A stretch of DNA of 64,000 nt from Malacoraja senta (Eukaryota): assembly GCA_038087875.1 (NCBI GenBank), contig CM075977.1:229338001-229402000 (forward strand), in the 5' to 3' direction. This document shows, one piece after another, positions 3,761 to 63,220 of this stretch. Position 1 is the stretch's first letter, and each line of letters begins with the position of its first letter. Made by a program: the position numbers and the translations under genes. The notes beneath the pieces are model-generated. The model did not search any database and had not been told where the DNA came from. It saw nothing but the letters and a program-made list of their open reading frames with translations.

Positions 3761-3824
3761 ATGAATTGTGGTGCTACTGTTGCAATCCTGCTGCTGTTTG
3801 GACATTGTGAAGCTTTCTCTCAGG
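3761..3824 (+). CDS. CXC chemokine-like gene A, exon 1 (signal peptide MNCGATVAILLLFGHCEAFSQ)
   Basis: ATG, hydrophobic core, 64 nt ending in phase 1 at G|gttaag. Clear nucleotide similarity to gene C exon 1. Confidence 0.8.
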
Positions 3825-4034
3825 GTTAAGGGAAGCATCTGCAAAGGTAGAAAAGGACAATCAAGAGAATTCTTACAGAAAGATATTCCCATACTTCTTA
3901 ATTGGAATGCCATGGCAACGGAAGCATAAAACTTCTTGGCCAAGTAGTAGTACTTATTCATCTGGCTAATTGGCTTCATTTAAAGCGAGAGATTTCATTT
4001 TATAAACAGACCATTGGCTAAATAATCTTAGAAA

Positions 4035-4235
4035 CAAGGAACTGCAGTTGGTGTTGTACAAAAATATATACAAAGTGCTGTGGTAACTCAGCAGGATTAG
4101 GCAGCATGTCTGGAGAACATGGATAGGTGACGTTTTAGGTTGGGACCTGAAGATAGGCCCTGATCCTGAAACGTCACCTATCCATGTTCTCCCAAGATGC
4201 TGCCTGATCCAGCTTGTCCCAGCTGACTCTTCCAC
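4035..4235. repeat. Short fold-back interspersed repeat of probable Penelope origin (other copies at about 3370-3530, 10370-10560, 19290-19430, 33340-33500, 37380-37480, 51813-52008, 56240-56320, 57050-57150)
   Basis: Recurrent gtaactcagcgggtcaggcagcatctctggag arm and ctgaagaagggt...acccgaaacgtc motif, often in inverted pairs. Confidence 0.6.
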
Positions 4236-5153
4236 AGCAACTACTAGAGTAAAGGACAATTAGACATGTTGTTTTCAGGATGAAGCATTAAACAGTCTTC
4301 TCAGGCACATATAAAAGTTTGCATGTCACTCATTGAAAAAAAATTGTCTGTGTCCAGAACAAAATTTATGCTCATGATTTTAAAAAATCTGATAATCTTG
4401 TCATTTAAATTATTTCATGTTGTACATAAAACAGCTGCGTAAAGCCTACACTGCAAATTGTTATAATGCACATTTTGATATCCTTAGGTTTATTGAAAGG
4501 TAAAGTTAAATTGGAAGAAGAAAGGATATGTCATCTTATAATGCTTGCTACCATCTCAGGCAATTTCCAACAAACTGTTTTTCACCTGATAGATTTGTGC
4601 TGGCACTGAGCTCAACTGCAGTGACGAATGCAAAAGTTTAACGCAGGATTCAAAATAGTAAGATTAAACGAGAACTTGCCAGTTTGAAGTTTGATCTGTA
4701 TTTTATGAGGAGTTACGATGAGGGATTACGTGAAGAACCCGTCCAGCACGCATGCGCGACATACTTCAAAGCAGCGGTGTGGAATCACAGGAACACAATA
4801 ATTGAAATAAACATAGTAAAGAAAAGGAGAACTAAGATACCAGTTGATCTCTATAATTGAGGGTGGGAGCGGAGGGCACGTAATCCCTCATCGTAACCCC
4901 TCATAAAATACAGATCAAACTTCAACTGGTAAGTTCTCGTTTAATCTTACTATTTTACTTCGGAGTCACGAGAGTGACTACGTGAAGATTTTAAAGCTCT
5001 GTGATTTCAAACCGTGTAACAGTTCATACTTCACTCGCTGCCGAAGTCATTCAAGGGATGAAATATGTTATCGTAATCAACCATGAATCTGTTGTAAACA
5101 ATAATGGTATTTTTTAAACAATAACTAAAGAAAAATGCTCCCCCGGGCTTAAA

Positions 5154-6134
5154 TTATATATTTGCAGATTCTAAAACTCTTTCTGCAAATAATACTGGTT
5201 CTGCTAGAGGCTTGTTGTAGAATGTTTGGAAAGTTTTCTCCATGGACCACCCCGCTGTAGCCAGGTCCAGTGGCACGTCCATCCTTTTACCCGCTAATGT
5301 GGATGCTGCCCTGGTGGAGTGAGATGTATATACGTCAGTATCTACTCCAGCGGCTCCCAGTACCTGCTTGAGCCATCTTGAGATAGTTTGGCTCGACACC
5401 CGACCATGAGGTTTCTTGTGGCTGACCCATAAGGCTTTTTCTCTCCCTCGGGAATCTCTTGTTGTGTTGATGTAAGTGAGTAAGTGAGTCATGACACATA
5501 ACCGTGGGTCAGGTGGGTATGCCCAGAAATCCATAACTAGGCCTGAAGTTCCTAGCCTGTTCTGCTTTACCAGCTCCTGAATGGTGAATGAGACACGGTC
5601 TGGTGTTATAACCATGTTGTCCAGTCGCAGTAAGTGGAGGGACTGGACTCTTTGTGCTGAGACTAGTGCCATCAGCATTACCGTTTTCAGGGTTAGCTGT
5701 TCCAGGGTGAGAGACCTGGCTGGTGACCATCCCCTTCAGTATGTCAGGACCACACTGACATCCCAGATTTGGGTGTACCTAGGTCTAGGGGGGCTGGAGT
5801 TGAATATACCTCTCATGAGTTTGATCACCAGCGGGTGAGACCCTATGGCCTGTTGTCCTGGTGCCTGTTTTAAGTAGGCTGACAGAGCACTTCTGGCAGT
5901 ATTGATGGCGCTGTAGCTCAGTCCTTCATTATGGTGAAGGCCGGCCAGGAACTCCAGTACATTGGTTATGGTTGTAGATGAGTATGTTGTCCCAGTATTG
6001 GAGCAGTATCTTTCCCACTTCCTGATGCTCGATAGGTATTGTTTCCTGGTGGACATACGGTGGGACGCTGTCATCGTGTTGATGGTCCTGTCAGACAATC
6101 CCAGGCCCAGCAGTGGTGTTTTCATAATCTGCAA
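5154..6134 (-). pseudogene. DIRS tyrosine recombinase, split into two ORFs
   Basis: SHSTRAAS...AGWS...FQTFYNKP catalytic motifs (5154-5678) and an N-terminal core-binding region (5736-6134). Confidence 0.88.
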
Positions 6135-9041: not shown

Positions 9042-9711
9042 GCGGCTCAGGTGGCTACTTCTGCCGCTCGTCGTCCTCGAGTCTTCCTCGTCGGAGTTAT
9101 CAGAGATTACCGGCCGGTCAGTTTTTCGTTTTGATTTACCTCCAGTCCGCTGCTGTTGTTCAGGCTGCGCTAGCGGTACTGGGCTCGGCTCGGTATCAAT
9201 GATTGTGGACCGCAGCGTGTGCGGTCCAATTGCCGCCTCTCGCCCCCCACTGATGGGACACTCCTGTTCTGTTGGAGTCGAACGGGGGCCGGTATTTTTT
9301 CCCTTGCCGTGCTTTGCACATTTTCCAGCTTTTCGATCTGGAGTTTACAAAGCAGAGCAAAGCTTCCTAATTACGACCTCAGAGTAAGTACTTACCTGAT
9401 GGTCCGCTTTTTTAAGCTTGTAACGGCAGCGCCTGCACTCCCGTTCGTCGCTGTTGCTCTGCGTGAACGCTAATGACGCGCATGCGTGCTGGTCGGGTTC
9501 TTCACGTAGTCACTCACGTGACTCCGAAGTAAAATTTAAGGACAAAAAGACATTAAATGCATTGTGATTCCAATAATGAGGTCGCTGCTTCCAAGTTACA
9601 TGTACTGTAACAAAATGATAATTAATTTTCACTGCACATCACATGTATACAAATACTGTGTAAATCACCATTTAAAGAATCATTTTTTACAACATTTAAT
9701 TTATTTTGCAG

Positions 9712-9844
9712 TTGTTCCTGTAAATGAAGATGAGGATGCACACTGTCGGTGTCCTGGCTATCATAAGAACAAGATACCCGGGATTTACATAACACAAATT
9801 GATATCTTTCCCAAGAGTAGAAGTTACAGAACAACAGAAATCAT
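9712..9844 (+). CDS. Gene A exon 2: (V)VPVNEDEDAHCRCPGYHKNKIPGIYITQIDIFPKSRSYRTTEI(I); CxC motif, Cys3 position is Tyr
   Basis: ttattttgcag| acceptor, AT|gtaaga donor, 133 nt, phase 1 to phase 2. CRC motif and TEII exon end are typical of CXC chemokines. Confidence 0.9.
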
Positions 9845-10083: not shown

Positions 10084-10182
10084 AGCACAGATTTATCCAA
10101 AATACAAGAGGAAGCCAATTTGTGTGGAGAGGACGGCTCCTTGGCTAAAGATATTAATCGAAGATTTATTAGCAAATACAAA
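10084..10182 (+). CDS. Gene A exon 3: AQIYPKYKRKPICVERTAPWLKILIEDLLANT; contains Cys4 and the APW motif
   Basis: ctttccgtttcag| acceptor, phase 2. Ends at AA|gtaaag, or reads through to K-stop at TAA 10184-10186. Confidence 0.88.
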
Positions 10183-10728
10183 GTAAAGAAAATAAGGACT
10201 TCATTTGCTGAAATGGTATTATACATTGTGAAATGTTCTTTTTGCTACAACTTCACTGTTAAATGATTTTCATTCTGGAAACATGATTTCCAGAATTGTA
10301 CCTCCAATATAAGTGTTTCATTTCATTAATAGCTTTCTAAAACTAACTATCAATAGGTAATGGGGACACAAGGAACTGCACATGCTAGTATCTTGAGCAA
10401 ACACAAAATGCCGGAGTAACTCATGAGTTGGGTTAGGAAAGTCAGGGGCGCCACCCAAATCATTGGCTATCCATTTCCTCCACAGATGCTGCCTGACCCA
10501 CTGCATTACTCCAGCACTGTGTGTTTTAATCAAGGTTCCAGCATCTGCAGTTCCTTGTGGTTTCAATATTGTTTATCTGACAGTTTATGGCAGTAGAAAA
10601 ATATACTAATTTCAACATACGGCCAAAGAAAGAAAATTTCTATCCAATCTGAAAATAAGTGTTTACTCTGCTTGGTGCTCTGTCCCTTTATTAATTTCAC
10701 AAGCAAGCTCTCAATGCACCTGTCACAG

Positions 10729-10771
10729 GGATCACAATCCTGATAATAATCACGCAATGATGCCACAATGA
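10729..10771 (+). CDS. Putative gene A exon 4: (K)DHNPDNNHAMMPQ*
   Basis: cacag| acceptor in phase 2 and AATAAA at 10796-10801. An alternative acceptor near 10703, or read-through of exon 3, cannot be excluded. Confidence 0.35.
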
Positions 10772-13639
10772 ACAATTGTTAACATGAAATATTTAAATAA
10801 ACTGCTTTTTGCTCCAACAATTATACTGTGGACATCGTTTCATTGAGTGGTACAAAGAGTGAAATGAAACATGTGACGATGTTGTGGCTGTGCTGGAAAG
10901 GGCACAGAGATGAATCACCAGGTAGTGTGACTTGGTGACTTACATCTGGTCGATCCAACATCCAGCATCATGAAGTACTTTGAGAGGCTGGTGGTTGCGT
11001 ACACTAGCTCCAGCCTCCCACACAGCCTTGATCCACTGCAAATCAGCTACTGCCGCAACTGGTCAATGCCATCTCCCTCGCCCTGCACTCTTCCCTGCAA
11101 CATGTAGATAACATAGACACCTACATCCAACTACTAATTGTTGAGCATAGCTCTGCCTTCAACACCATAATGCCATCCAAATTCATCTCAAAATTGCTGG
11201 ACTTTGGAATCTGCACCCTCCTCGGCAACTGGATCCTTGACTTCTTAACTATAGACTGCAATCAGCAAGGATACGCAACAAAACATCCTGCTTATTAATT
11301 CTCCACTCCTGTGCCTTGCAAGAATATGTTCTAAGCCCCTTAATATACACAATTGTGCAGCTAAACTCTGCTACAACTCCATTTATACTGAACTGACAAG
11401 AACCTTTGTTGGGACAAAGTTATTCACATGGATGGTCTGAAAGCTTCAGGGTCAGATACCGCAGACACTCAAATTAGTGTTGTGAGGTTGGATTCTCTGA
11501 GAACACAAACAGAGTCTTGGACTCATGCAGTTATACAGTTCATGCACAGAAACAGGCCCTTCAGCCCTACTTGCCAATGCTGACCAAGCTGCCCTATATA
11601 CACTGGTCCCATTTGCCGATGTTTGGCCCATATCCCTCTAAACATTTCCTGTCCATGTACTTGGCCAAATGTCTTTTAAATGTTATCTGCCTCGACTTCC
11701 TCTGGCAGCTCGTTTCATATACCCACTGTGCTCTGTGTGAAAAACTTGCAACTCAGATTCTTAGTAAATCTTTCCCCTCTCACCTTAAACCTATGTCCTC
11801 TGGTTCATGATTTCCCTACTTTCAGTAAAACATTGTGTCCACCTATTCTATCTTTTCCCCTCATGATTTTATACACTTCTATAAGATCACCACTCATCCT
11901 CCTGCACCCCATGGAATGACGTTCTAGCCAGCTCAACCTCTCCCTATAGTTCAGGCCCTCAAATCCGGGCAACATCCTCGTAAATCTTCTCTGCACTCCT
12001 TTCAGTCTAACAACATCTTTCCTATAGTAGCGTGACCAAAACTGAACACAAGCCTCCAAATGTGGCCTCACCAGCATCTTGTACAACAGTAACGTAACAT
12101 CCCAACTTCTGTACTCAATATCCTGACTGATGAAGGCCAATGTTCCAAAAGCCTTCTTGACCTCCCTATCTATCTGTGACACCACATTCAAGGGGGTGGG
12201 AGATTGCAACCATGACGTGGTCCACCCTGTTTCGACTAATGAAATCAACCCGACGTGCACAAAGAAGATCAAATAGAACAAGTTGACCTACAACTTTAGG
12301 CTGTGCACGCCATAGGCAAGAAGAAGACCACGTTCAAGTAACAATGTGCATGCGCTCCCAGTTCCCTCTGCTCTACAACACTCCCCGGAGCCCAGCCAAA
12401 ATATCCCAAGTACTGGTAGACAGAACAATTATGCCCATTACCATGTTTAATATGCTATGTAACAAAATAATCAAACTGGAGCCTTTGTTGATCCTTCACA
12501 AAGATGCTAAATAACTGAACATGCATATGACAGCATGGAAACAGGACCTTCAAACATGTTATATAGAACGGCACAACAAAGGAACAGGTCCATCAGACCA
12601 GTGTCTGCGCCAAACATGATCAAAAGACAAACTGATCTCATCTGCGTAAATATGATCCCAATATCCCCCTTCCCTGCTTATCTATGTGCGTATCTAAAAG
12701 GTTCTTAAACGCCACTATCGTACCTGCCTCCACCACCATCCCTGGCAGCGCACTCCAGGCATCTTCATGGTAAAAAAAACTGCCCCGCTTGTCTCCCTTA
12801 AACTCAATGCCCCGGACTTCAAACCTATGCCCTCCAGCCTTAGAAATCTCGAGCCTGGAGAAAAGGTCCTGACTCACTTTCCTATCTGTGCTTCCCATAA
12901 TGTTATACCTCTATCAGCTTTCCACAACCTCTGATGCTCCAGAGAAAACAATCCAAGTTTGTCCAAGTGCTCCTTTTAGCCTATGCACTATAATCCAGAC
13001 ACCATTCTGGTTCCTCTTCTGTACCCACTCCAAATCCTTCACATCCTTCCTGTATTGGGAAGACCAGAATTGCACGCAATCCTCAAACTATGGTCTTACC
13101 AAAGTACAACCTGATTCCTGACTCTTTAGTCCGTGCCCCGACCAATGAAGGCAAACGTATCATACGCCTTCTTTACCACTCTCTCTACTAGTGTTGCCAC
13201 ATTCATTGAGCTATCAACTCGGACCCCAAGGTCCCTCTGCACATCAATTCTGTTAAGGGTCTTACCACTAACTGTAAACTTCTCCCTTATGCACCACCTC
13301 CCAAAATGCAACACTTGGTTTAAACTCCATCTGCCATTTCTCTGCCCATATCTGTAACTGATCTATTTTGCACTGCATCATTGGACAGCCTTCCTCATTG
13401 TCCTGTAAGTATTTCATTGTTCCATCGTTGGTTCTTTAGGATCACTGATTTGCTGAGTCCAGTGGAAGCGTTTAAATCTTTTTGTTCAGGCACAATGGAC
13501 ATTCTGCATCAGAGCAAAGCATTAAAATATCTTAACTAAAAATTGAACATATCATAACTAACAGAACAAAACACTATGGAATTAGTACTGAAAGACTAAA
13601 GACTGAACATGACGTTTATGGACACACTGAACATAGAGT

Positions 13640-13890: not shown

Positions 13891-13971
13891 ACCTGTCATT
13901 TAAGCAACAATAGATAATTATTAGAGACAGTTCACAGAATGTTCACTTGGATATGGATTGTCTTATTAGAG

Positions 13972-15780: not shown

Positions 15781-15843
15781 AGTTCTACAGTGTTAGTGTT
15801 ACACTCCTGCTGCTGTTTGCAATTGGTGCAGCTTTGCCTATGG
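15781..15843 (+). pseudogene. Gene B exon 1 with lost start codon (ATGAAC replaced by GTTC relative to gene C)
   Basis: Reads YSVSVTLLLLFAIGAALPM then G|gtgaga. There is an in-frame TGA upstream with no intervening ATG. The only in-frame ATG is at 15840-15842. Confidence 0.8.
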
Positions 15844-16312
15844 GTGAGAAAAATACCCTACATCTTGTCATTTATAGTCTTTAAGCTTTATAGCTGTAAT
15901 TAGATTTTTGATTAATTCAGCCAGTTGAATGAACTGTTGAAGACAGTTCACCGAATGTTCACTTGGATAATATTAGATATGGATTGTCTTATAATAAATG
16001 GTTGAAGCTGGTGGGTCTGTTCTCATTGTAACTTAAAAAATGAGCGGTGATCACACTGAAACATAGAATCCTGAGGGGGTTTGGCTGATTCTGATCCAAA
16101 GACAGTGTGTGTTTTCCAGGTTGTTCTATTTGATGTTCAGTCTTGCAGGTTACTATGTGTCCAGATGGAACTTGATGTGTCCTTCCTCGGTCTTAGAATA
16201 GGCCTTGTTATAACAGTGCAGAAGGCCCAAAAAGAGGCCACATTGTGAACACTGAAAGTAATAAAACAAATTTTAAGGAATACATTTTTACAACATGTCA
16301 TTTGTTTTACAG

Positions 16313-16445
16313 CAGCTCGTTTAAATATCAAAGAAGGAGCACATTGTAGGTGCAGTAAGTATGCAAAAAATTCCATGTCCAAGGATAATATTTATAAAAT
16401 TGAAATCTTCACCAGGAGCACAATGTGCAAATACACGGAAATCAT
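16313..16445 (+). CDS. Gene B exon 2: (A)ARLNIKEGAHCRCSKYAKNSMSKDNIYKIEIFTRSTMCKYTEI(I)
   Basis: ttttacag| and AT|gtaaga, 133 nt, Cys1, Cys2 and Cys3 intact. Confidence 0.88.
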
Positions 16446-16694: not shown

Positions 16695-16791
16695 AGCGCA
16701 TCAGATTTCACCACATGAGAAAGTTTGTTTGAAAGGGAAGACTTCCTGGGTGAAGATGCTTATTAATGAGTTACTTACCAAAACTGCATAG
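16695..16791 (+). CDS. Gene B exon 3: AHQISPHEKVCLKGKTSWVKMLINELLTKTA*
   Basis: tttctttcag| acceptor, Cys4 and Trp present. Stop TAG TAG where gene C has ATG CAG, so the protein is 5 aa shorter. Confidence 0.88.
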
Positions 16792-17077: not shown

Positions 17078-18256
17078 AGAAGATTCAATTGTTGGGTATT
17101 AATGGTGGAGTAGCAAGATGGATTCAACAGTGGCTGAATGGGAGATGCCAGAGAGTAATTGTGGATGGCTGTTTGTCAGGTTGGAGGCCGGTGACTAGTG
17201 GGGTGCCTCAGGGGTCTGTGTTGGGTCCACTGTTGTTTGTCATGTACATCAATGATCTGGATGAAGGTGTGGAAAATTGGATTAGTAAGTATGCAGATGA
17301 TACTAAGATAGGTGGTGTTGTGGATAATGAAGTAGATTTTCAAAGTCTACAGAGAGATTTAGGCCATTTGGAAGGGTGGGCTGAAAGATGGCAGATGGAG
17401 TTTAATGCTGACAAATGTGAGGTGCTACATCTCGGCAGGACAAATCAAAATAGGACGTACACGGTAAATGGTAGCGAATTGAGGAATGCAGTTGAACAGA
17501 GGGATCTAGGAATAACTGTGCATAGTTCCCTGAAGGTGGAATCTCATGTAGATAGGGTGGTAAAGAAAGCTTTTGGTGTGCTGGCCTTTATAAATCAGAG
17601 CATTGAATATAGAAGTTGGGATGTAATGTTAAAATTGTACAAGGCATTGGTGAGGCCAATTCTGGAGTATGGAGTACAATTTTGGTCGCCTAATTATAGG
17701 AAGGATGTCAACAAAATAGAGAGAGTGCAGAGGAGATTTACTAGAATGTTGCCTGGGTTTCAGCAACTAAGTTACAGAGAAAGGTTGAACAAGTTAGGTC
17801 TTTATTCTTTGGAGCGCAGAAGGTTAAGAGGGGACTTGATAGAGGTCTTTAAAATTATGAGCGGGTTAGACAGAGTGGACGTGGATAAGCTTTTCCCATT
17901 GAGAGTAGGGAAGATTCAAACAAGGGGACATGACTTGAGAATTAAGGGACAGAAGTTTAGGGGGAACATTAGGGGGAACTTCTTTACTCAGAGAGTGGTA
18001 GCTGTGTGGAATGAGCTTCCAGTGGAAGTGGTGGAGGCAGGTTCGATGTTATCCTTTAAAAATAGATTGGATGGGTATATGGATGGGAAAGGAATGGAGG
18101 GTTATGGTCTGAGTGCAGGTAGATGGGACTAGGGGGAAGTATTTATTTTTAATTTTAAAAAAAATTTAAAAAAAAAATGTTTGGCACGGACTTGAAGGGC
18201 CGAGATGGCCTGTTTCCGTGCTGTTATGGTTATATGGTTATATGGTTATATGGTTA
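17078..18256 (+). mobile_element. Young 5'-truncated CR1-type LINE downstream of gene B
   Basis: Uninterrupted RT C-terminus to the stop at 18132 and (ATGGTTAT)n tail. TGGTTA occurs on both sides (17072-17077, 18251-18256). Empty site at 32329-32334. Confidence 0.93.
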
Positions 18257-30918: not shown

Positions 30919-30949
30919 ATTGCGCAACCCTATTTATTCGGAATATAAA
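30919..30949 (+). promoter_or_regulatory. Gene C promoter: near-palindromic C/EBP site ATTGCGCAAC (30919-30928) and TATAAA (30944-30949)
   Basis: 9/10 match to the ATTGCGCAAT consensus, 15 nt before the TATA box. Confidence 0.6.
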
Positions 30950-31030
30950 TGCAGAGGAAATAGAAGGCACCAAGAAAAACCAACTGAATCAGAAAGGCAA
31001 GGCAAGGCTCGGGAAGACTGGAATCCGACA

Positions 31031-31094
31031 ATGAACTACAGTGTTAGTGTTACACTCCTGCTGCTGCTTGGAATTTGTGCAGCTTTGTCTATGG
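31031..31094 (+). CDS. CXC chemokine-like gene C, exon 1 (MNYSVSVTLLLLLGICAALSM)
   Basis: ATG, hydrophobic core, 64 nt, G|gtgaga donor. Confidence 0.9.
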
Positions 31095-31569: not shown

Positions 31570-31702
31570 CGGCTCATTTAAATATCAATGAAGGAGCACA
31601 ATGTATGTGCAGCACATATGAAACAAATTCCACGTCCGTGGTTGATATTTATAAAATTGAAATCTTCATGGCGAACGAAAAGTGCAACTACACGGAAATC
31701 AT
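31570..31702 (+). CDS. Gene C exon 2: (A)AHLNINEGAQCMCSTYETNSTSVVDIYKIEIFMANEKCNYTEI(I)
   Basis: ttttacag| and AT|gtaaga, 133 nt, CMC and Cys3 present. Confidence 0.92.
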
Positions 31703-34468: not shown

Positions 34469-34668
34469 NNNNNNNNNNNNNNNNNNNNNNNNNNNNNNNN
34501 NNNNNNNNNNNNNNNNNNNNNNNNNNNNNNNNNNNNNNNNNNNNNNNNNNNNNNNNNNNNNNNNNNNNNNNNNNNNNNNNNNNNNNNNNNNNNNNNNNNN
34601 NNNNNNNNNNNNNNNNNNNNNNNNNNNNNNNNNNNNNNNNNNNNNNNNNNNNNNNNNNNNNNNNNNNN
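34469..34668. other. Assembly gap, 200 N
   Basis: Run of N with a round fixed length. Confidence 0.99.
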
Positions 34669-47600: not shown

Positions 47601-48852
47601 CTAGGGTCTATTTTCTAACTTTACTTCCTTCTCTAACCTCTTTTCTAAGGGGCTTTCTTTTCCCAACACTCTTTTGCACTTCACAACCTTTGCGCACTTT
47701 CTTCACTTTTCTTACTTCTTTCTTTTTCTTTCTTAAAGTTTAAAAAAGTGAAGCGGTACAAAAAATGTATTAATATATACGTGTTGTACATTACTGTAAT
47801 CTACCGTACTTCTAAAAAATAAAAAATATTAAAAAAAAAAATAAAAAAAAACTCTGACCAGCTTCCCTGTCCCTGCTGAAGAAAAGCATCCCCACAGCAT
47901 GATGCTGCCACCACCATGTTTCACAGTGGGGATGGTGTGTTCAGGGTGATGTGCAGTGTTAGTTTCCGCCACAAATAGCGTTTTGCATTTAGGCCCAAAA
48001 CTTCAATTTTGGTCTCATCTGCCCAGAGCACCATCCTCCACATGTTTGCTGTGTCCTCCACATGGCTTGTGGCAAACTGCAAACGGGACTTCTTATGGCG
48101 TTTTTTCCAACAATGGCTTTCTTGTTGCCACTCTTCCATAAAGGGCCGATTTGTGGAGTGCACGACTAATAGTTGTCCTGTGGACAGATTCTCCCACCTG
48201 AGCTGTGGATCTCTGCAGCTCCTCCAGAGTTACCATGGGCCTCTTGGCTGCTTCTCTGATCAATGCTCTCCTTGCCAGGCCTGTCAGTTTAGGTGGACGG
48301 CCATGTCTTGGTAGGTTTGCAGTTGTGCCATACTCTTTCCATTTTCGGATGATGGATTGAACAGTGCTCCGTGAGATGTTCAAAGCTTGGGATATTTTTT
48401 TATAACCTAACCCTGCTTTAAACTTCTCCACAACTTTATACCTGACCTGTCTGGTGTGTTCCTTGGGCTTCATGATGCTGTTTGTTCACTAATGTTCTCT
48501 AACAAACCTCTGAGGCCTTCACAGAACAGCTGTATTTATACTGAGATTAGATTACACACAAGTGGACTCTATTTACTAATTAGGTGACTTCTGAAGGCAA
48601 TTGGTTGCACTGGATTTTATTTAGGGGTATCAGAGTAAAGGGGGCTGAATACTTTTGCACGCCACACTTTTCAGTTTTTTATTTGTAAAAAAATTTGAAA
48701 ACCATGTATCATTTTCCTTCCACTTCACAATTATGCGCCACTTTGTGTTGGTCTATCACATAAAATCCCAATAAAATGCATTTACGTTTGTGGTTGTAAC
48801 GTGACAAAATGTGGAAAAGTTCAAGGGGTATGAATACTTTTGCAAGCCACTG
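44659..48852 (-). mobile_element. Tc1-family (DD34E) transposon with long IR/DR termini, split by an L1
   Basis: TA TSDs and about 212-bp TIRs starting CAGTGGCTTGCAAAAGTATTCA with an internal direct repeat. Paired-like HTH (48093-48473), WADETK, QQDNDPKH and SPDLNPIENLW motifs. Confidence 0.95.
45289..47850 (+). mobile_element. Inner 5'-truncated L1 with a 679-aa open ORF2 segment (45398-47437)
   Basis: Poly-A tail and 16-bp TSD AACTCTGACCAGCTTC (45273-45288, 47850-47865). RT and CxxC...H domains are uninterrupted. Confidence 0.95.
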
Positions 48853-51800
48853 TATGTTCCTACCGCACAGCCGCCGCCAGTGAGGCACGAGTGCGGCACG
48901 GCCGCCACCACAGCCGCCGCCAGTGAGGCACGAGCGCCGTGAGTCGAACCTGCACCGCCACAGCCTCCGCCAGTGAGGCACGTGTGCGGCATGGCCGCCG
49001 CCACAGCCGCCGCCAGTGAGGCACGTGTGCGGCACGGCCGCCGCCACAGCCGCCGCCAGTGAGGTACGTGTGCGGCACAGCCGCCGACAGTGAGGTACGT
49101 GTGTGGCACGGCCGCCGCCACAGCCCCGTGATCCGAAAGACGTCATCAGCCGAAACCGCAAGCTCGTTGAACCGGCCGTACTTGGCCCCCCGCGCAGCAT
49201 CCGTGCGGCGCTCTCGTGGTTGCCGTGCGGTCCCCTCTTCCGGCGACGCCGCGCTTCACCGCCAATGACCGCAAACCCGTGGGACAGAGCCTTAAGTGTT
49301 TTTTTTTAATTCTATGTGATTTATAATCCCAAATAAAATGAGTAATATTAGAGTCTAATTTTTTTTTAAAGTATTTTGGTATATATACTGGTATAGATTG
49401 AAATAGGTATAATAATTGTGGTAGAAAGATCATTTTTATAGCATTTATTCTACCTATTAATGATAAAGGAAGTGTTTTCCAAAATGTAATCAGTATATTA
49501 AGTTTATTTAATAAAGGTATAAAATTAGTATTGAATAATGCTTTATATTTTCTAGTAATCTGAATACCCAATTATTTAAATTTTTCTGTTGCTATTTTAA
49601 AGGGGAACTTCAATAAGTGTGTGGATTCTTGAGGTTTTAACGTCATGATTTCACTTTTATTCCAACTTATTCTATATCAAGAAAAGGACCCAAATTCCTT
49701 TATTAAATTTAATATATTTGGTATGCTCGTTTGTGACTTTGTAATATATAAAAGTATATCGTCTGCATATAATGAAATGTTATTATTTGAGTCCCTAGTA
49801 TTATAGCCCTGAATATTAGGATGAATTCTTATACTTTCAGCCAAAGGTTCTATCACAAGGGCAAATAGCAGGGGTGATAACGCACATCCCTGCCTATTAC
49901 CCCTTGATAATTGAAACTTTTGAGATAACATATTATTAGTTAATATTCTTGCCATCGGTTTACCATACAATAATTTTACCCATGTAATAAAATTCTCTCC
50001 CATATTAAATTTTTGCAGTACTTTGTATAAGTACTGCCACTCTACCTGATCAAATGCTTTCTCTGCGTCCAAAGAAATAATTGATATATCTTCTTCCTCC
50101 ACTTTATGTGAGTACATTATATTAAACAGGCGTCTCAAATTATTAAATGAATATCTTTTGGGTATAAACCCCGTTTGATCAGGGTTTATCAATTTACTAA
50201 TATATTTGCTTAATCTTTTTGCTAAAGTCTTTGCTAAAATTTTCTGGTCTGTATTTAAAAGTTATATAGCTCTATATGAGCCCGGATCCTCTAAATCTTT
50301 TTTTTTTTTTTTTGGAATAAGCGTAATAGTTGATTCTGCTAATGTTTCAGGTAGTTTATTTTCTTTAAAAGCTTGAGTATATAAATTATATACATAAGGA
50401 GTTGTTATCTCATGAAATTTTTTATAAAATTCATTACTAAAACCATCTGGTCCCGGTGTCTTGCCATTTTTCAACGATTTTATTGTTTCACCTATTTCTT
50501 CAATTGTAATTTGAGCACCAAGTTCCTCTTGTTCCAAAAGGTCAAGTTTTGGAAGATTACAGTTATCTAAAAAAAATTTAATTTTACTATCTTCTATTTT
50601 AGTTTTAGATGTATATAAATTTTAATAAAATTGAGCAAATCTTTTATTAATATCTTTAGATAGTATTAGTAATTCACCTTTCTCTGATTTCATTTTAGTT
50701 ATAGTATTTTCCTTTCCTTGTTTTTTCAATTGACGAGCTAAAAGCTTATGTGGTTTGTCACCAAACTCAAAATGTTCCTGTTTTGTAATTTTGTAATCTT
50801 ATTACTCTTGCCGATAAAATTCGATTAAGTTTAAATTTCAGTAATATTATCTTATTATGTTTATCTGTAGTGGAGTCTTTAGCATTATCTAACTCTAACT
50901 GTCTAATTTCTTGTTCTAACAACATTCTGTCTTATTCTTTTTATTTTGAAAAATTTGATATGAAATTATAATTCCTCTAATAAATGCCTTAAAAGTTTCC
51001 CATAATAAAGAAGGCGAAGTACCTGGTATATCATTTGTATCAAAAAAAAGTTTCATTTGTTGTTTTAAATATTGATAACCTTGTGTGTCATTTAAAATAT
51101 GTGTATTAAACCTCAAAAAAAAAATCTTACCCGGCATTCCCTCGAATTTTACTGACAATGTCAATGCAGAGTGATCAGAAATACTACTAATGTGGTATGT
51201 TGAATTAATTGTATGTGGCATTAATTTCATATCCACTAAAAAATAATCAATTCTTGAATAAGTTTTATGTACCGAAGAGTAAAACGAGTATTCCCTTCCA
51301 ACTGGATTAGCAGATCTCCATACATCTGTTATATTAGTATTTTTTATATATGTATTTAGAAGTTCACTAGTCTTAGATTTTAAATTACTCCTCTTTTGTT
51401 TTACTGATTTGTCTAGATATGAATCTAAAACACAATTGAAGTCCCCCCCCCTATTATCACATTCTGGTAATTAAACTCTGATATCTATAATTTTATCAAA
51501 AAATTTGGGGTTGTCAAAATTCGGTGCGTAAATATTTATCATAGTTAGTGGGGTTGCATAAATTTCTCCCGAGACTCTAATATACCTTCCCTCTTTATCT
51601 GATATAGTATTCTTTAATTTAAAAGGTATACCTTTTCGAATGAGAATAGCCGTACCTCTAGATTTAGAAGTAAATGACGAATAGTATGTTTGACCTATCC
51701 ACTTCGCCTTTAATCTCATTTGTGTTTGTTGTTTCATGTGAGTTTCCTGTAAAAACATTATGTCGCTGTTCATAGATTTTAGTTGAACTGTCTTAACTGT

Positions 51801-52202: not shown

Positions 52203-52329
52203 CTGATGCTGAAAGCCACCTTCTAGTTAAATCACAATGTAAATGCGTGACTGTCACATCCAAAACAGTTGTTTCTGAATTGCCTAATGGGGCACGCGTG
52301 GAGCAGCTCATGAGGGATATACACATTGT
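52203..52329 (+). CDS. Gene D exon 2: (A)DAESHLLVKSQCKCVTVTSKTVVSELPNGARVEQLMRDIHI(V); CxC present, no Cys3
   Basis: tattttcttacag| acceptor, GT|gtaagt consensus donor, 127 nt, phase 1 to phase 2, open frame. Confidence 0.8.
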
Positions 52330-56066: not shown

Positions 56067-56147
56067 AGTTCCCACGAGGAGCAGAGAGAACATTTCAGAT
56101 CCAACCTCCCCTATTCGGAACAAGTTTGTCTACAAAATTTCAGATTT
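56067..56147 (+). CDS. Gene D exon 3: VPTRSRENISDPTSPIRNKFVYKISD; no Cys4
   Basis: ttattttattgcag| acceptor, phase 2. Aligns ungapped with the chemokine R-E-x-C-L-D-P-x-A-P-W motif. TT|gtatga phase-2 donor. Confidence 0.7.
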
Positions 56148-58424: not shown

Positions 58425-58521
58425 CTGCAAGAATTGCAACCAAAAGCCAACTTTACCTGGTGAACCCCAATGCAAACCCCCACCTCCCCCTGCAGACACC
58501 TGCTACGGCCGTGACATCTAG
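58425..58521 (+). CDS. Gene D putative exon 4: (F)CKNCNQKPTLPGEPQCKPPPPPADTCYGRDI*
   Basis: atattttgttgcag| acceptor, phase 2 matches exon 3, TAG stop, AATAAA at 58728-58733. Confidence 0.62.
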
Positions 58522-60711
58522 TGAATGCCAATACCGTAAAAACACCATGGGAACCAAATGGATGCTGTGTGGAATCCCAAACGCCACTGGAATCCACAGC
58601 CTACAGCGCCCTCTACTGAAACATGATTCCGCCTCCATGTCAGATGTTTTTCCCATAACGACATTGTGTTTCTTAATGCATTTTTAGCTTTATATAGTTG
58701 CATTTGCTTTTTTATCTTCATTGAACAAATAAAATGCTTCCTTGCTTCAAAACTTGTTTTGTGCAAATCCCGTTCTTTGACTTGTAGCATCATTTCTAAT
58801 TTGTCATAGTTTGCTTTTACTTTTTTTGATGACAAACAAAATGAAGGCCACATGTCAATGCAGCAGACCACCACTCAGTAGGTTTTGTGGAAACGGGAGT
58901 TCCAGAAATATCTTAACATATGGGCCTGAATTCTGTAATCAGCAGCAAAGCAAAAACACCCACTATTCCAGGGAATTGCTGGTAAGTAGTGTCTTCAAGC
59001 GGACAGATACTCATAAGTCACAAACAGAATGCAAAAGGTGCAATTTTTGAAAAGTACTTCAAACAACATGCAGAGCACAAATGCATCAGAGAAGAGTCAG
59101 TGAATTTTATAAATATTTTTAAAATATTGTTTTCATTATTCCTATGTATTCATGGAACGAGCTGCCAGAGGAGGTTGTTGAGGCAGATATTATAACAACA
59201 TTTAAATACATTTGGACAGGCTGATGGATAGGAAAGGCTTAGAAGGATATGGGCCAAACACAGAGGTGAGACTAGTGTGGATGGGGCATCTTGGTCGACA
59301 TGGACAACGTGGGCCAAAGGGCCTGTGTTTATGCTGTATGATTGACTATATGACTCTAAGAGATGAACAGTGGAGGATATGGAAGAGGACATAATTAGGC
59401 ACACAAACTCTGTTATCACCCGTGTTATATTCCACATGTGTGGAGATGCTGCGAATACTCTCAAATTCATGGTGTATAATACAAAATGTCAAAAGTGTAG
59501 TCATCGATGTAACAGTAAAGTACAGGTTGAAGGTGGAGTAGTGGAAAGAGCCAGGCCAGTTGTGGAGGGGGAGGGGGAGGGGGAAATGAAGGAGGCCAGA
59601 AAGAGTTAGGCCAGTGATGGAGGAGGGGGCAAAGGAGCTCTGACAGAGATGAAGGAGAGGGAGAGTCAGGCCAGGAAATAAGGAAGGTGAAAGAACCAGA
59701 CTAGGATTAGAGTAAAAGGAAAGTGCCAGGTCAGGGATAGTGGAGGGGGGAGGTTCGGAGATACTCAAGGGGTCTGTCTCCCAGGTGCAGGAAAGTTGAC
59801 ATTTTCAATTGAAGTTTTCCTTTCCCCTGGATCCCTATGAATTACTTAAAATCTTAAACTAAAAAGCAACATTTTAAGGAACAATATTTCTGCATTATTA
59901 TTGTGTACGAGCCTTAGATGTTGTTCACCTTACCAAGCAGGAACAAACTTCCAATTCCTGATTTGTGTGTTTTGACATATGAATATTTTTAGTTTAGTTT
60001 AGAGATACAACATGCAAACAGACCCGATTAGCAAGTTTGCTGATCACACTAAAATAGGTGGTACCATGGACAGTGAAGTTGGTTATTAAGAATCACAGCA
60101 CGATCTTGATCAGCTGGGCAAGTGGTGCAAGGAATGGCTAATGGAGTTTAATTCAGATTTACAAGGACATTGCCAAGACCCGAAGGGCTGAGCTATAGGG
60201 AGAGGTTGGGGAGGCTAGGACTTTAATCCTTGGAGCACAAGAGGCTGAGGGCTGATTTGAGAGAACTGTTTAAAATCATACGGGGAAGAACTTTAATGGC
60301 ATTGACGTGCAGAGACCTTGGAGTCCAAGTTTATCTATATTACTAAAAGTAAGATCTTGACCGCTTTTGACTCACGGCGATGTGATTTCCGAAGAACGCC
60401 GCCACTTACGGCCATCATCTTTGGCCACCTCGCTCAGAGCCCCCCTCCGCAGGAGTGGACCAGAGGATTTTTCCTATCGATGAAAAATCAGAGAGATATT
60501 AATGTTTTTTAAAATTCGCCATTCTCTCTGCTGCCCCTGCTGGTGGGAGGGGGAGGGACTATAAAACCCGGAAGTGGTGTGCCTCACTCAGTCTCTGCAA
60601 AATGCAGGAAGTGAGAGGGTCACGTCTCTCTGAGCTCTGAATAACACTTAACACATGTCTACTCAACTGTGAGTGCCCTTAATGTGGTTTGAAAATGAAA
60701 ATATGGTTGGT

Positions 60712-61010
60712 TTGAAGTAAAAAGGCATTGCAAAGGGTTGTTTGGAGGGTTTGGGTTGAAGTAAAAAGGCACTGCAAATGGTTGTTTGGGGGTTTTGGGT
60801 TGAAGTGAAAAGGCACTGCAAATGGTTGTTTAGGGGTTTTGGGTTGATGTGGAAAGGCACTGCAAATGGTTGTTTGGGGGTTTTGGGTTGAAGTGAAAAG
60901 GCACTGCAAATGGTTGTTTGGGGGTTTTGGGTTGATGTGAAAAGGCACTGCAAATGGTTGTTTGGGGGTTTTGGGTTGAAGTGAAAAGGCACTGCAAATG
61001 GTTGTTTGTC
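60712..61010. repeat. 44-bp minisatellite, about 6.5 copies, inside the Helitron
   Basis: gggttgaagtgaaaaggcactgcaaatggttgtttgggggtttt at 60753, 60797, 60841, 60885, 60929, 60973. Confidence 0.95.
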
Positions 61011-61399
61011 TAAACTTGACAACCTGTTTGCACTATTTTGATTTTAGATAAAACGCTACCACTTACGGCTGTGATTTTTGGCCATCTTACTCAGTCCCCC
61101 TCCGCTCATCAGGTGCAGAGGATTCTTCCCATCAATGAAAAATAAAAGTGATATTAGTGTTTAAAAAATGTTGAGAATCTCTCTCCTGTCAATCACGCCA
61201 TGAAGGCCACACCTTTTCTGGTGGGAGGGGGAGGGATTATAAAACCCGGAAGTGTGGGTGTGGCTCAGTCTCTGCATGATGGGGGAGGGAGAGGTCATGA
61301 CTCTGTCTGAGCTGTGAATCAACTGAACACACTGAATGTCTACTGAACTGTGAGTGTGGTGTTTTGTGTGGTTTTATGATGGTTTTATGGTGGTTTCAC

Positions 61400-61890
61400 C
61401 CTGTTTGAAATGGTATGAAACTGCATTTGAATGTGGTGGCCTTGCACCCTGCATGAAATGGTATGAAACTGCATTTGAATGTGGTGTCGTTGCACACTGC
61501 ATGAAATGGTATGAAACTGCATTTGAATTTGGTGGCCTTGCACCCTCCTTGAAATGGTATGAAACTGCACTTGAATTTGGTGGCCTTGCACCCTGTTTGA
61601 AGTGGCATGAAACTGCACTTGAATTCGGTGGCCTTGCACCCTGCTTGAAGTGGTTGGAAACTGCACTTGAATTCGGTGGCCTTGCACCCTGCTTGAAGTG
61701 GTAGGAAACTGAACCTGAATTTGGTGGCCTTGCACCCTGCTTGAAGTGGTATGAAACCTCACTTGAATTTTGTGGACTTGCACCCTGAGGCAAGAAACTG
61801 CACTTGAATTTGGTGGCCTTGCACCCTGCTTGAAATGGGAGGAAAATGGATTTGAATTTGGTGGACTTGCACTCTGCTTGAAATGGAATT
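61400..61890. repeat. 48-bp minisatellite, about 10 copies, inside the Helitron
   Basis: tgaaatggtatgaaactgcacttgaatttggtggccttgcaccctgct units. These produce the 16-aa periodic spurious ORFs. Confidence 0.95.
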
Positions 61891-62185
61891 TCAAGAGCCG
61901 TGAGTCAACTGCCAGCCCACCAGCCGTGAGAGAGCTGTCAGCACATCAGGCTTGAGGGACTGAGCTGCCACCGCAAGAATCCATTTGGCCCACAATGTCC
62001 ATCGTAGCCCTCTGGAGACCAGTTGTCCCTGCATCCAACAACATCCATACCAGCGCTCCAGAAAGCTCCCCCCCCCCCACCCCCACTGGCCACCAATATT
62101 GGAATTGGCAGAGAGGTGGAATATTGCGTCGGGGTACCAGCCCTCCCATGTGAACATGGGACCCAACGGTTCCCACTTAGTCTAG

Positions 62186-63220
62186 TACACAGTAAATGTT
62201 AGGACCCTAGAAAGTATTGTAGAATGCAGGGGCTTAGAGTTACAGGTATATAGTTCCCTGAAAGTGGCAACACAGATAGAAAGGGGGGTGGAGATGAAGA
62301 AGGAGTTTGGCACACTTCCCTTTATTGGTTAGGGGCATTAACTATAGAAATTTGGACGCCATGTTGCAGTTCTATAAGAGAACGAGCTACCAGAATGAGT
62401 TCTAGAGGTGGATATAGTTAAAATGTTTAAAAACATTTGGACAGATAAGCAGATAGAAAAGGTTCAGAGGGATAGGGGAAACTGGGCTAGCTCAGTTTGA
62501 CATGTTGGTTAGCATGAGGGAGATGGGCTGAAGGGCATATTTATGTGCGGCATAGCTCTATGACTGCGTTAATGAGAAATATATCTTTGATTGATCATAT
62601 ATTTTGTTGCAGCTGCAAGAATTGCAACCAAAAGCCAACTTTACCTGGAGAACCCCAATGCAAACCCCCACCTCCCCCTGCAGACACCTGCTACGGCTGT
62701 GACATCTAGAGAATGCCTATTCCGTAAAAACACCATGGGAACCAAATGGATGGTGCGTGGAATCCCAAACGCCACTGGAATCCACAGCCTACAGCGCCCT
62801 CTACTGAAACATGATTCCGCCTCCATGTCAGATGTTTTTCCCATAACGACATTGTGTTTCTTAATGCATTTTTAGCTTTATATAGTTGCATTTGCTTTTT
62901 TATCTTCATTGAACAAATAAAATGCTTCCTTGCTTCAAAACTTGTTTTGTGCAAATCCCGTTCTTTGACTTGTAGCATCATTTCTAATTTGTCATAGTTT
63001 GCTTTTACTTTTTTTGATGACAAACAAAATGAAGGCCACATGTCAATGCAGCAGACCACCACTCAGTAAGTTTTGTGCGAACGGGAGTTGCAGAAATATC
63101 TTAACATATGGGCCTGAATTCAGCAGCAAAGCAAAAACACCCACTATTCCAGGGAATTGCTGGTAAGTAGTGTCTTCAAGCGGACAGTTACTCATAAGTC
63201 ACAAACAGAATGCAAAAGGT
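62186..63220 (+). repeat. About 1-kb duplication of 57999-59040 (CR1 remnant, gene D exon 4 and 3' UTR), offset 4188
   Basis: Colinear from tacacagtaaatg to cagaatgcaaaaggt. Confidence 0.95.
62613..62709 (+). CDS. Duplicate of gene D exon 4: (F)CKNCNQKPTLPGEPQCKPPPPPADTCYGCDI*
   Basis: Same acceptor, frame, stop and AATAAA. Two coding differences (GGT/GGA silent, CGT/TGT Arg to Cys). Confidence 0.45.

What the first reader, a model, noticed from the sequence alone, without database searches (positions are those of the whole stretch)
3761..62709. Hidden tandem cluster of divergent ELR-negative CXC chemokine-like genes, each atypical in a different way
Seen in sequence: four same-strand genes share a phase-1 signal exon, a CxC exon ending in (E/H)-I-I/V at phase 2, and a DP/AP-W-type exon 3. 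A lacks Cys3, B lacks its ATG, C is acidic and has glycosylation sequons, and D lacks Cys3 and Cys4. A duplicated flank at 1-2910 implies a further copy upstream. None has ELR (residues before CxC are DAH, GAH, GAQ, KSQ). Inference: a lineage-specific birth-and-death immune gene family that automated annotation would probably miss.
Basis: partly seen in the sequence, partly recalled or inferred. Interest (0 to 1): 0.8.

Follow-up and report, generated by a model that had tools for sequence, protein, structure and literature searches.

The report
Skate chemokine genes beside J chain

Summary
The four same-strand genes with a CxC exon and matching intron phases are real. Only three of them (A, B, C) are CXC chemokine genes.

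**Gene D is the immunoglobulin J chain gene.**
- Kawasaki et al. 2024 (PMC10801876) showed that JCHAIN derives from a CXCL gene, shares its exon phases and CXC position, and lies downstream of a CXCL cluster in sharks and rays.
- The shared architecture is therefore a rediscovery of known biology.

**Gene A.**
- It has annotated relatives in other skates, named "CXCL13-like" or "interleukin-8-like".
- All of those relatives keep Cys3; A alone has Tyr there.
- A also carries a 5.1-kb transposon in intron 1.

**Genes B and C.**
- They are a young duplicate pair of a second subtype.
- A profile search of a library built from about 15 billion proteins found no match to this subtype.
- B has lost its ATG.
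- C is intact, acidic (pI 5.1) and has three N-glycosylation sequons.
- B and C exons differ about three times more than their introns (P about 1e-7). This points to diversifying selection.

**Assembly gap.** It lies between genes and touches no exon.

**Verdict:** new members of a known kind; modest interest.

The parts
1..2910 (+). Copy of the 3' flank of gene A (matches 10491-13403). It implies another A-type gene ending about 300 bp before the window starts.
   Evidence: 95.5% identity over 2.9 kb. In Leucoraja erinacea locus L003 the matching flank directly follows the A-type gene P0004 and runs on into an A-type exon 1.
3761..3824 (+). Gene A exon 1 (signal peptide, 21 codons plus 1 base, phase 1). 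A TATAAA box lies 79 nt upstream.
   Evidence: matches exon 1 of P0004 in L003
4603..9686 (.). 5.1-kb mobile-element insertion in intron 1 of A. It has inverted repeats near both ends and a tyrosine-recombinase ORF (5154-5678, minus strand), so it is DIRS-like.
   Evidence: Absent from the orthologous intron in L003. Pfam Phage_integrase 22.7 bits, below the 27.1 cutoff. Inverted repeats 4719-4762/9473-9516 and 4937-4988/9499-9550.
9712..9844 (+). Gene A exon 2 (133 nt, phase 1 in, phase 2 out): DAH-CRC, with Tyr at the Cys3 position.
10084..10186 (+). Gene A exon 3 with Cys4, the APW motif and the TAA stop. The product is 99 aa.
   Evidence: An HMM built from the A-type proteins of other skates scores the spliced product at 180 bits.
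15781..15843 (+). Gene B exon 1 remnant. The start codon is destroyed (CAATGAAC in C reads CAGTTC in B).
16313..16445 (+). Gene B exon 2 (GAH-CRC, Cys3 present).
   Evidence: Pfam IL8 16.8 bits on this exon alone
16695..16791 (+). Gene B exon 3 (Cys4, SWV motif, TAG stop).
   Evidence: Pfam IL8 13.8 bits on this exon alone
31031..31094 (+). Gene C exon 1 (signal peptide). A TATAAA box lies 87 nt upstream.
31570..31702 (+). Gene C exon 2 (GAQ-CMC, Cys3 present, sequons NST and NYT).
   Evidence: Pfam IL8 14.8 bits
31952..32063 (+). Gene C exon 3 (Cys4, SWV motif, sequon NKT, TGA stop). The product is 102 aa and the mature pI is 5.1.
   Evidence: The A-type HMM scores the spliced product at 69 bits; 9,000 shuffles reach at most 10 bits.
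34469..34668 (.). Assembly gap in repeat-rich DNA between genes.
51674..51737 (+). This is the least certain part of the model.
   Evidence: A similar ORF ending at a GT donor is kept in L003.
52203..52329 (+). JCHAIN exon 2: 12 residues, then CKC, ending HI-V in phase 2.
   Evidence: Pfam Ig_J_chain 21.9 bits, profile positions 2-37. Seven of the nine PDB hits, all weak (E 0.005-1), are J chains.
56067..56147 (+). JCHAIN exon 3 (81 nt, phase 2 in and out) with the conserved RENISDPTSP..FVY glycosylation block.
   Evidence: Found by a phase-aware exon scan. Pfam Ig_J_chain 38.1 bits, E=1.8e-9, positions 41-66, cutoff 27. All 8 PDB hits are J chains, E=1.4e-7.
58425..58521 (+). JCHAIN exon 4: CKNC, a proline-rich stretch, two more Cys, then the stop. 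It is short and divergent.
   Evidence: Phase-2 acceptor, and CKNC lines up with human CKKC straight after FVY.LSD. No Pfam or PDB match of its own.
62613..62709 (+). Second copy of JCHAIN exon 4, with one residue changed (R to C), inside a 1-kb duplication (57999-59044 matches 62186-63226).
   Evidence: 94% identity

Best explanation
The window is part of the CXCL-cluster/JCHAIN region of a skate genome. The skate is about 6% diverged from Leucoraja erinacea at the DNA level.

**The genes.** Three compact genes lie head to tail on the + strand. Each has a TATA box and three coding exons, with intron phases 1 and 2, and each encodes an ELR-negative CXC chemokine.
- A belongs to a subtype that NCBI annotates in other skates as CXCL13-like or interleukin-8-like.
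- B and C are a young duplicate pair of a second subtype, not seen in public protein sets.
- 19.6 kb downstream lies the four-exon immunoglobulin J chain gene.

**Why D looks like a chemokine gene.** D shares the chemokine gene layout (signal exon in phase 1, CxC at the same place in exon 2, phase-2 junction). JCHAIN arose from a neighbouring CXCL gene in the ancestor of jawed vertebrates. This is the published conclusion, not mine.

**How the family changes.** The chemokine family turns over by tandem duplication, transposon insertion and decay.
- B is a pseudogene because it has no start codon.
- A is probably impaired or decaying. It has a single TGC-to-TAC change that removes Cys3, leaving Cys1 unpaired, and a 5-kb insertion in intron 1.
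- C is the intact copy and has diverged from B under diversifying selection.

**Shown:** the gene models, the family assignments, the lesions and the excess divergence of exons.
**Inferred:** which copies work, and selection as the cause of the excess.
For: **D is JCHAIN.**
- Pfam Ig_J_chain hits on exon 2 (21.9 bits, positions 2-37) and exon 3 (38.1 bits, positions 41-66, above the cutoff).
- PDB hits are J chains: all 8 for exon 3 and 7 of the 9 weak hits for exon 2.
- Four exons with phases 1-2-2, one NIS sequon, and a basic mature protein of pI 8.6, as reported for cartilaginous-fish J chains (PMC10801876).

**A, B and C are chemokines.**
- A profile of their exon 2 retrieved one credible match from 1.84 billion cluster representatives, P0001 (E=5e-11). 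The only other match was a weak hit to 15 residues of a 1,558-aa protein, not examined further.
- P0001 is 'interleukin-8-like' from Rhinoraja longicauda and scores 37.8 bits on Pfam IL8.
- Its relatives P0003 and P0004 are annotated 'CXCL13-like'.
- An HMM of these three proteins scores A at 180, C at 69 and B at 67 bits. 9,000 shuffled controls reach at most 10 bits.
- PDB sequence hits of P0004 and P0001 are all chemokines: all CXC for P0001, and CXC plus the viral chemokine vMIP-II for P0004.
- The top 50 Foldseek hits of the P0004 model are all CXC chemokines, with CXCL13 first.
- 98 of 100 ESM-Atlas hits are IL8-family clusters.

**Orthology and layout.** L003 is 92-94% identical to the window over kilobases, and intron 1 of the A-type gene there lacks the insertion.

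**Selection.**
- B versus C: exons 40/293 differences, non-coding DNA 51/1164, Fisher P=9e-8; dN 0.168 against an intron divergence of 0.044.
- A versus the L. erinacea gene: exons 26/233, non-coding 105/2192, P=2e-4.
Against: - The full-length spliced products of A, B and C were not run against Pfam or folded, because they have no reference in the tools. On single exons the IL8 scores are below the cutoff, and A's exons give no hit.
- The structural model is of an orthologue and has low confidence (pLDDT 58).
- There is no expression data, so the calls 'intact' and 'pseudogene' rest on sequence only.
- dN/dS for B versus C is 1.58 and is not significant on its own (P=0.34). dS (0.106) also exceeds the intron divergence, so exon-limited gene conversion from an unseen paralogue cannot be excluded.
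- JCHAIN exon 1 is weakly supported, and exon 4 has no detectable similarity to other J chains.
- The linkage of C to D crosses an assembly gap.
Confidence: 0.85

Rival explanations
1. One reading: all four are chemokine-like genes of one lineage-specific family. D would be a chemokine that lost Cys3 and Cys4 and gained a Cys/Pro-rich tail by splicing exon 2 directly to the terminal exon.
For: Exon 2 spliced to the exon at 58425 stays in frame, because the skipped exon is 81 nt. D shares the exon-1 length, the phases and the CxC position with A, B and C.
Against: - A perfectly placed 81-nt exon with good splice sites encodes the most conserved J-chain block and scores 38.1 bits on Ig_J_chain.
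- Exon 2 itself hits Ig_J_chain, not IL8.
- The A-type chemokine HMM gives D no score above the shuffled controls.
- The literature explains the shared architecture (PMC10801876).
Confidence: 0.03
2. A, B and C all work, and their oddities are adaptations. A would be a single-disulfide chemokine with a free Cys1 that could form covalent dimers. B would be translated from a non-AUG start or an unseen upstream exon. C would be an acidic, glycosylated variant.
For: - The reading frames and splice sites of all three are intact, and TATA boxes and polyA signals are present.
- B keeps all four Cys and a basic pI of 9.6. In-frame CTG codons lie in its signal region.
- Chemokines with one disulfide (XCL1) are known (my own knowledge).
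Against: - All other A-type copies seen in three skates that cover the site keep Cys3, so the loss is recent and single.
- B has also lost the signal-peptide Cys and changed two other conserved signal residues.
- A young pseudogene would still look intact elsewhere.
Confidence: 0.15
3. The excess exon divergence between B and C comes from gene conversion of the exons by a third, unseen paralogue, or from homogenisation of the introns. It would not come from positive selection.
For: Synonymous divergence (0.106) is also above intron divergence (0.044), although it rests on only 4.5 synonymous changes. The family is tandemly repeated and rearranged.
Against: - 18 of the 27 residues that differ between B and C match no A-type copy, so the A-type genes are not the donor.
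- The same exon excess appears in the between-species comparison of A with the L. erinacea gene.
- Introns 1 and 2 and both flanks all show similarly low divergence.
Confidence: 0.2
4. The lesions in A and B (Cys3 to Tyr, the ATG loss) are assembly or sequencing errors.
For: The Cys3 change is a single G-to-A base. The region is duplicated and could be mis-polished. This is inference only.
Against: The ATG loss combines a 2-bp deletion with a substitution outside any homopolymer. Both genes carry many other private substitutions.
Confidence: 0.05

Closest known systems
CXCL cluster A with jchain downstream in cartilaginous fishes (Kawasaki, Ohta, Castro, Flajnik, PNAS 2024, PMC10801876)
   Same: - Same-strand CXCL genes are followed by jchain.
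- The genes share the phase 1-2(-2) layout, with the signal/mature boundary at the exon 1/2 junction and CXC at the same place in exon 2.
- The J chain is basic and has a lineage-specific C-terminus.
   Different: - The CXCL genes here end in exon 3, giving three coding exons, whereas the paper describes four as usual.
- They lack the ELR motif that the paper lists for CXCL8-like genes. B and C do keep the Glu and WV motifs.
- I could not see the paper's datasets, so I cannot say whether this species or these exact genes are listed.
Skate proteins XP_078268758.1 'interleukin-8-like' and 'C-X-C motif chemokine 13-like' (Rhinoraja longicauda, Leucoraja erinacea; P0001, P0003, P0004)
   Same: - A matches them end to end (180 bits on an HMM built from the three) and has the same 99-aa, three-exon layout as P0001 and P0003 (P0004 is modelled as 96 aa).
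- Locus L003 is 92-94% identical in DNA to the window.
   Different: - A has Tyr in place of Cys3 and a 5.1-kb insertion in intron 1.
- B and C are far more distant from these proteins: 67-69 bits on the same HMM, against 180 for A. They form a second subtype with no counterpart found in public protein sets.
Mammalian CXCL13, CXCL6 and CXCL8 (solved structures)
   Same: CXC motif, four-Cys pattern, the TEII and W motifs, and a three-strand-plus-helix topology. The best PDB matches are CXCL13 for P0004 and CXCL6 then CXCL13 and PF4 for P0001.
   Different: Only 25-36% identity. The best match changes with the query, so one-to-one orthology to any mammalian CXCL is not established. No ELR motif.
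Tetrapod immunoglobulin J chain (e.g. PDB 6kxs chain J)
   Same: CKC near the N-terminus, the RENISDPTSP-R-FVY block, CK(K/N)C after it, and four exons with phases 1-2-2.
   Different: - The mature protein is about 101 aa against 137.
- It is basic rather than acidic.
- The C-terminal hairpin with its Cys pair is missing. In mammals this hairpin contacts the secretory component (my own knowledge). The paper notes that the elasmobranch C-terminus is unique.

Membership tests
CXC chemokines (Pfam IL8, PF00048) | Significant match to the IL8 domain model | tested here: inconclusive
   - Window exons alone fall below the 21.3-bit cutoff: B exon 2 16.8, B exon 3 13.8, C exon 2 14.8, A none. The spliced proteins could not be submitted.
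- Indirect evidence is strong. The close relative P0001 scores 37.8 bits. An HMM of the three annotated skate chemokines scores A at 180, C at 69 and B at 67 bits, against at most 10 for 9,000 shuffles.
CXC chemokines (Pfam IL8, PF00048) | CXC motif plus Cys3 and Cys4 (two disulfides, 1-3 and 2-4) | tested here: met
   Met for B and C. Not met for A, which has Tyr at Cys3; the other A-type copies that cover this site keep it.
CXC chemokines (Pfam IL8, PF00048) | Secretory signal peptide on a separate exon joined in phase 1, and a phase-2 junction after exon 2 | tested here: met
   Met for A and C. B has the exon but no start codon.
CXC chemokines (Pfam IL8, PF00048) | Chemokine fold (N-loop, three beta strands, C-terminal helix) | tested here: inconclusive
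   Only the orthologue P0004 could be modelled, at pLDDT 58. Strands 45-51, 61-66 and 73-76 are followed by helix 82-94. The top 50 Foldseek PDB hits are all CXC chemokines, best E=3.8e-3.
ELR+ CXC chemokines (CXCL8-type) | Glu-Leu-Arg directly before CXC | tested here: not met
   DAH, GAH and GAQ precede CXC.
CXCL13 orthologues | Grouping with CXCL13 rather than with other CXCLs | tested here: inconclusive
   P0004 matches CXCL13 best (30.9 bits), but P0001 matches CXCL6 best (37.8 bits). No tree could be built for lack of a broad CXCL sequence set.
CXC chemokines (function) | Binding to a CXCR receptor and chemotaxis | not testable with these tools
   Needs experiments.
Immunoglobulin J chain (Pfam Ig_J_chain, PF15097) | Significant match to the J-chain model | tested here: met
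   Exon 3 alone scores 38.1 bits, E=1.8e-9, against a cutoff of 27. Exon 2 scores 21.9 bits on the adjoining profile positions. PDB hits are J chains: all 8 for exon 3 and 7 of 9 weak hits for exon 2.
Immunoglobulin J chain (Pfam Ig_J_chain, PF15097) | Four exons with intron phases 1-2-2 and linkage to a CXCL cluster | tested here: met
   Exons of 64, 127, 81 and 97 nt with phases 1-2-2, lying 19.6 kb downstream of CXCL gene C. The join crosses the assembly gap.
Immunoglobulin J chain (Pfam Ig_J_chain, PF15097) | Conserved N-glycosylation block, and Cys residues at CxC and CxxC | tested here: met
   RENISDPTSP..FVY, CKC and CKNC are present.
Immunoglobulin J chain (Pfam Ig_J_chain, PF15097) | Tetrapod-type C-terminal half (all eight Cys, acidic protein) | tested here: not met
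   Six Cys, pI 8.6, and a 31-residue exon-4 product with no Pfam or PDB match. This fits the published description of elasmobranch J chains (PMC10801876).

The most novel reading that the evidence does not exclude
B and C represent a skate-specific CXC chemokine subtype that no public annotation holds. After a recent duplication, C was driven by positive selection to reverse its charge (pI 9.6 in B, 5.1 in C) and to gain three N-glycosylation sites. That would give a chemokine-like protein with altered binding to glycosaminoglycans or receptors, for example a decoy or antagonist, next to the J-chain gene.
Probability: 0.3. Interest if true: 0.45.

Novelty: new member of a known kind. Interest (0 to 1): 0.3.

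Why it matters
- **Correction.** It fixes a tempting misreading. The 'chemokine without its partner cysteines' is the J chain, the protein that joins IgM subunits.
- **Independent confirmation.** A reader working from raw sequence grouped D with the chemokine genes by architecture alone. That supports the 2024 proposal that JCHAIN is a co-opted CXCL gene.
- **Annotation.** The report gives exon-level models for three skate CXCL genes and for JCHAIN. It also identifies a CXCL subtype missing from public protein sets.
- **Evolution.** It gives a clean example of exons diverging faster than introns in an immune gene pair. This can be tested with RNA-seq and population data.

Tried and rejected
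- **Word-index protein searches.** Searches with the exon-2 stretches of C and A found no candidate. P0001 shares several 5-residue words with A and still was not returned, so these blanks say little.
- **PDB searches with single chemokine exons or the three-sequence exon-2 profile.** They gave only noise: MAP kinase, AimR.
- **ESM-Atlas look-up of C exon 2.** It was uninformative, with scores of 0.66.
- **JCHAIN exon 4.** It has no Pfam or PDB match.
- **Polarising the B/C differences with A-type outgroups.** Unresolved: 5 derived in C, 4 derived in B, 18 ambiguous.
- **More chemokine or J-chain exons.** tblastn found none in the window. It found no B/C-type or J-chain exons 2-4 in the 22-23 kb loci from the two other skates.
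- **Long ORFs between the genes.** They are retroelement fragments (RVT_1, zf-RVT), not host genes.
- **Apparent reshuffling of the B/C duplication around the gap.** It is explained by a LINE fragment (17078-18250, RVT_1) inserted in copy B, with a second copy of the element at 35709-36422.
- A vertebrate-wide CXCL phylogeny, Pfam scans and structure prediction of the spliced window proteins. There was no reference for spliced sequences and no homology searches remained.
- **Supplementary datasets of PMC10801876.** They are not held.

Full report
**1. What the DNA is.**
- The window is vertebrate-like: 41% G+C, CpG depleted, with one run of 200 N at 34469-34668.
- It contains recent segmental duplications:
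  - 1-2910 matches 10491-13403 at 95.5%.
  - A block around 13405-19872 matches 29776-34414 at 92-96%.
  - 57999-59044 matches 62186-63226 at 94%.

**2. Checking the observation.**
- Six-frame translation finds exactly four CxC exons on the + strand, preceded by DAH, GAH, GAQ and KSQ.
- Each has an AG acceptor in phase 1 and a GT donor in phase 2.
- For A, B and C I built three-exon models:
  - A: 3761-3824, 9712-9844, 10084-10186 (99 aa).
  - B: about 15781-15843, 16313-16445, 16695-16791.
  - C: 31031-31094, 31570-31702, 31952-32063 (102 aa).
- All three have a TATA box 79-87 nt before the start site, or before the former start site in B. PolyA signals follow the stops.
- The stated oddities hold:
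  - A has Tyr where Cys3 should be.
  - B has lost its ATG, and no in-frame ATG follows the upstream stop apart from the last codon of exon 1, which lies after the signal peptide.
  - C is acidic (mature pI 5.1, against 9.6 for B and 9.1 for A) with sequons NST, NYT and NKT.

**3. Gene D is the J chain gene.**
- Pfam placed D's exon 2 in Ig_J_chain (21.9 bits, profile positions 2-37), not in IL8. Most of its weak PDB hits (7 of 9) are J chains.
- A phase-aware scan of the 6-kb 'intron' found an 81-nt exon at 56067-56147 with good splice sites. It encodes the RENISDPTSP..FVY block.
- That exon scores 38.1 bits on Ig_J_chain (E=1.8e-9, positions 41-66, cutoff 27). It hits eight J chains and nothing else in the PDB (E=1.4e-7).
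- With exon 1 at 51674-51737 and exon 4 at 58425-58521, the gene has four exons in phases 1-2-2 and encodes 122 aa. The mature protein is basic (pI 8.6), with six Cys and one NIS sequon.
- Exon 4 begins CKNC, where human J chain has CKKC. Otherwise it has no detectable relatives.
- The missing Cys pair is, from my own knowledge of the human disulfide map, the pair in the C-terminal hairpin that contacts the secretory component. The paper below states that the elasmobranch C-terminus is unique.
- A second copy of exon 4 lies at 62613-62709.

**4. This is known biology.**
- Kawasaki, Ohta, Castro and Flajnik (PNAS 2024, PMC10801876) reported four points:
  - JCHAIN is a co-opted CXCL gene.
  - It shares the 1-2-2 phases, the signal/mature boundary at the exon 1/2 junction, and the CXC position.
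  - In sharks and rays it lies downstream of a CXCL cluster.
  - Cartilaginous-fish J chains are neutral or basic.
- As in the paper, sequence methods see no link. My A-type chemokine HMM gives D nothing above the shuffled controls.

**5. A, B and C are CXC chemokines.**
- Single exons score below the IL8 cutoff. Spliced proteins have no reference in the tools, so I did not submit them.
- A profile of the three exon-2 peptides, searched against 1.84 billion cluster representatives, returned one credible match, P0001 (E=5e-11). The only other match was a weak hit to 15 residues of a long protein, which I did not examine.
- P0001 is XP_078268758.1, 'interleukin-8-like', from Rhinoraja longicauda. 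It scores 37.8 bits on Pfam IL8.
- Its relatives P0003 (same species) and P0004 (Leucoraja erinacea) are annotated 'CXCL13-like'.
- An HMM of these three proteins scores spliced A at 180 bits, C at 69 and B at 67. 9,000 shuffles reach at most 10 bits.
- PDB sequence hits of P0004 and P0001 are all chemokines (all CXC for P0001; CXC plus the viral chemokine vMIP-II for P0004), led by CXCL13 and CXCL6 respectively.
- A low-confidence model of P0004 (pLDDT 58) has three strands and a C-terminal helix. Its top 50 Foldseek matches are all CXC chemokines.
- 98 of 100 ESM-Atlas hits are IL8-family clusters.
- Assignment to one mammalian CXCL is not possible from these data.

**6. Comparison with other skates.**
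- The L. erinacea locus L003 is 92-94% identical to the window over kilobases. The R. longicauda loci are 84-88% identical. The window therefore comes from a skate closer to L. erinacea.
- L003 runs [A-type gene P0004][flank matching window 1-2910][A-type exon 1 matching 3761-3824].
- The other A-type copies found that cover the Cys3 site (three annotated, one unannotated inverted copy and two exon-2 fragments) all keep Cys3. A's loss is a private TGC-to-TAC change.
- A's intron 1 is 5.9 kb long because of a 5.1-kb insertion that L003 lacks. The insertion has inverted repeats and a tyrosine-recombinase ORF.
- Copy number and orientation differ between the species, which fits birth-and-death evolution.
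- No B/C-type protein exists in the library built from about 15 billion proteins. That subtype is unannotated in that library.

**7. Rapid exon evolution.**
- Between B and C, exons differ at 40 of 293 sites (exon 2: 18%). Introns and flanks differ at 51 of 1164 sites (intron 2: 2.4%). Fisher P=9e-8.
- dN is 0.168 and dS is 0.106. The ratio of 1.58 is not significant alone, but dN is nearly four times the intron divergence (P=3e-7).
- A against the L. erinacea gene shows the same pattern: 26/233 against 105/2192, P=2e-4.
- Diversifying selection is the simplest reading. Exon-limited gene conversion from an unseen paralogue is not excluded.
- Outgroup polarisation could not say which of B or C changed more.

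**8. The assembly gap.**
- It lies 2.4 kb after C's stop codon and 17 kb before JCHAIN exon 1, among retroelement fragments. No exon or frame touches it.
- Copy-B sequence matching the left edge does not continue on the right edge, so continuity cannot be shown.
- Only the order and distance of C relative to JCHAIN depend on the join. The published synteny makes that order plausible.

**9. Verdict.**
- The region is the known CXCL-JCHAIN neighbourhood, with three new family members of which one or two are decaying.
- The young B/C pair and the charge reversal of C are the only mildly novel points.

Noticed in passing
L003:3050-4699 (Leucoraja erinacea), matching window 50103-51746: About 5 kb upstream of the L. 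erinacea A-type chemokine gene lies a stretch 82% identical to the JCHAIN upstream region plus exon 1 of the window. The similarity stops exactly at the exon-1 donor. It keeps an ATG-initiated ORF of the same length, but no J-chain exons 2-4 follow within 5 kb. It may be a partial duplicate of the JCHAIN promoter and exon 1 placed before a CXCL gene, or a repeat that supplied exon 1.
   Followed up: partly
L003:21392-21857 (minus strand) and L003:15839-15901: L. erinacea has an unannotated inverted A-type copy (exons 2 and 3, Cys3 present) and a lone A-type exon 1. The cluster is therefore arranged differently in that species.
   Followed up: partly
L003:11430-11440 versus window 9704-9712: The exon-2 acceptor CAG of the window gene reads CATG in L. 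erinacea. This probably explains why the NCBI model P0004 uses a downstream acceptor and is 3 residues shorter.
   Followed up: no
window 60707-61008 and 61346-61962: Tandem repeats with 44-nt and 48-nt units lie between the two copies of JCHAIN exon 4.
   Followed up: no
window 43277-47437 and 46247-50246: Two diverged LINE-like elements in opposite orientation (72-78% identical, with a 215-bp stretch at 98.6%) fill most of the space between gene C and JCHAIN. They carry RVT_1 and zf-RVT ORFs.
   Followed up: partly
window 15955-16000 and 31205-31250: A short ATG-initiated ORF ending at a phase-1 GT donor sits in intron 1 of both B and C. It is a weak candidate for an alternative first exon and has no convincing signal peptide.
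   Followed up: no
L001 and L002 (Rhinoraja longicauda CM130163.1, 128.1 Mb and 121.3 Mb): Two A-type chemokine genes lie 6.8 Mb apart on one chromosome. This fits the two CXCL clusters per chromosome reported for sharks and rays.
   Followed up: no
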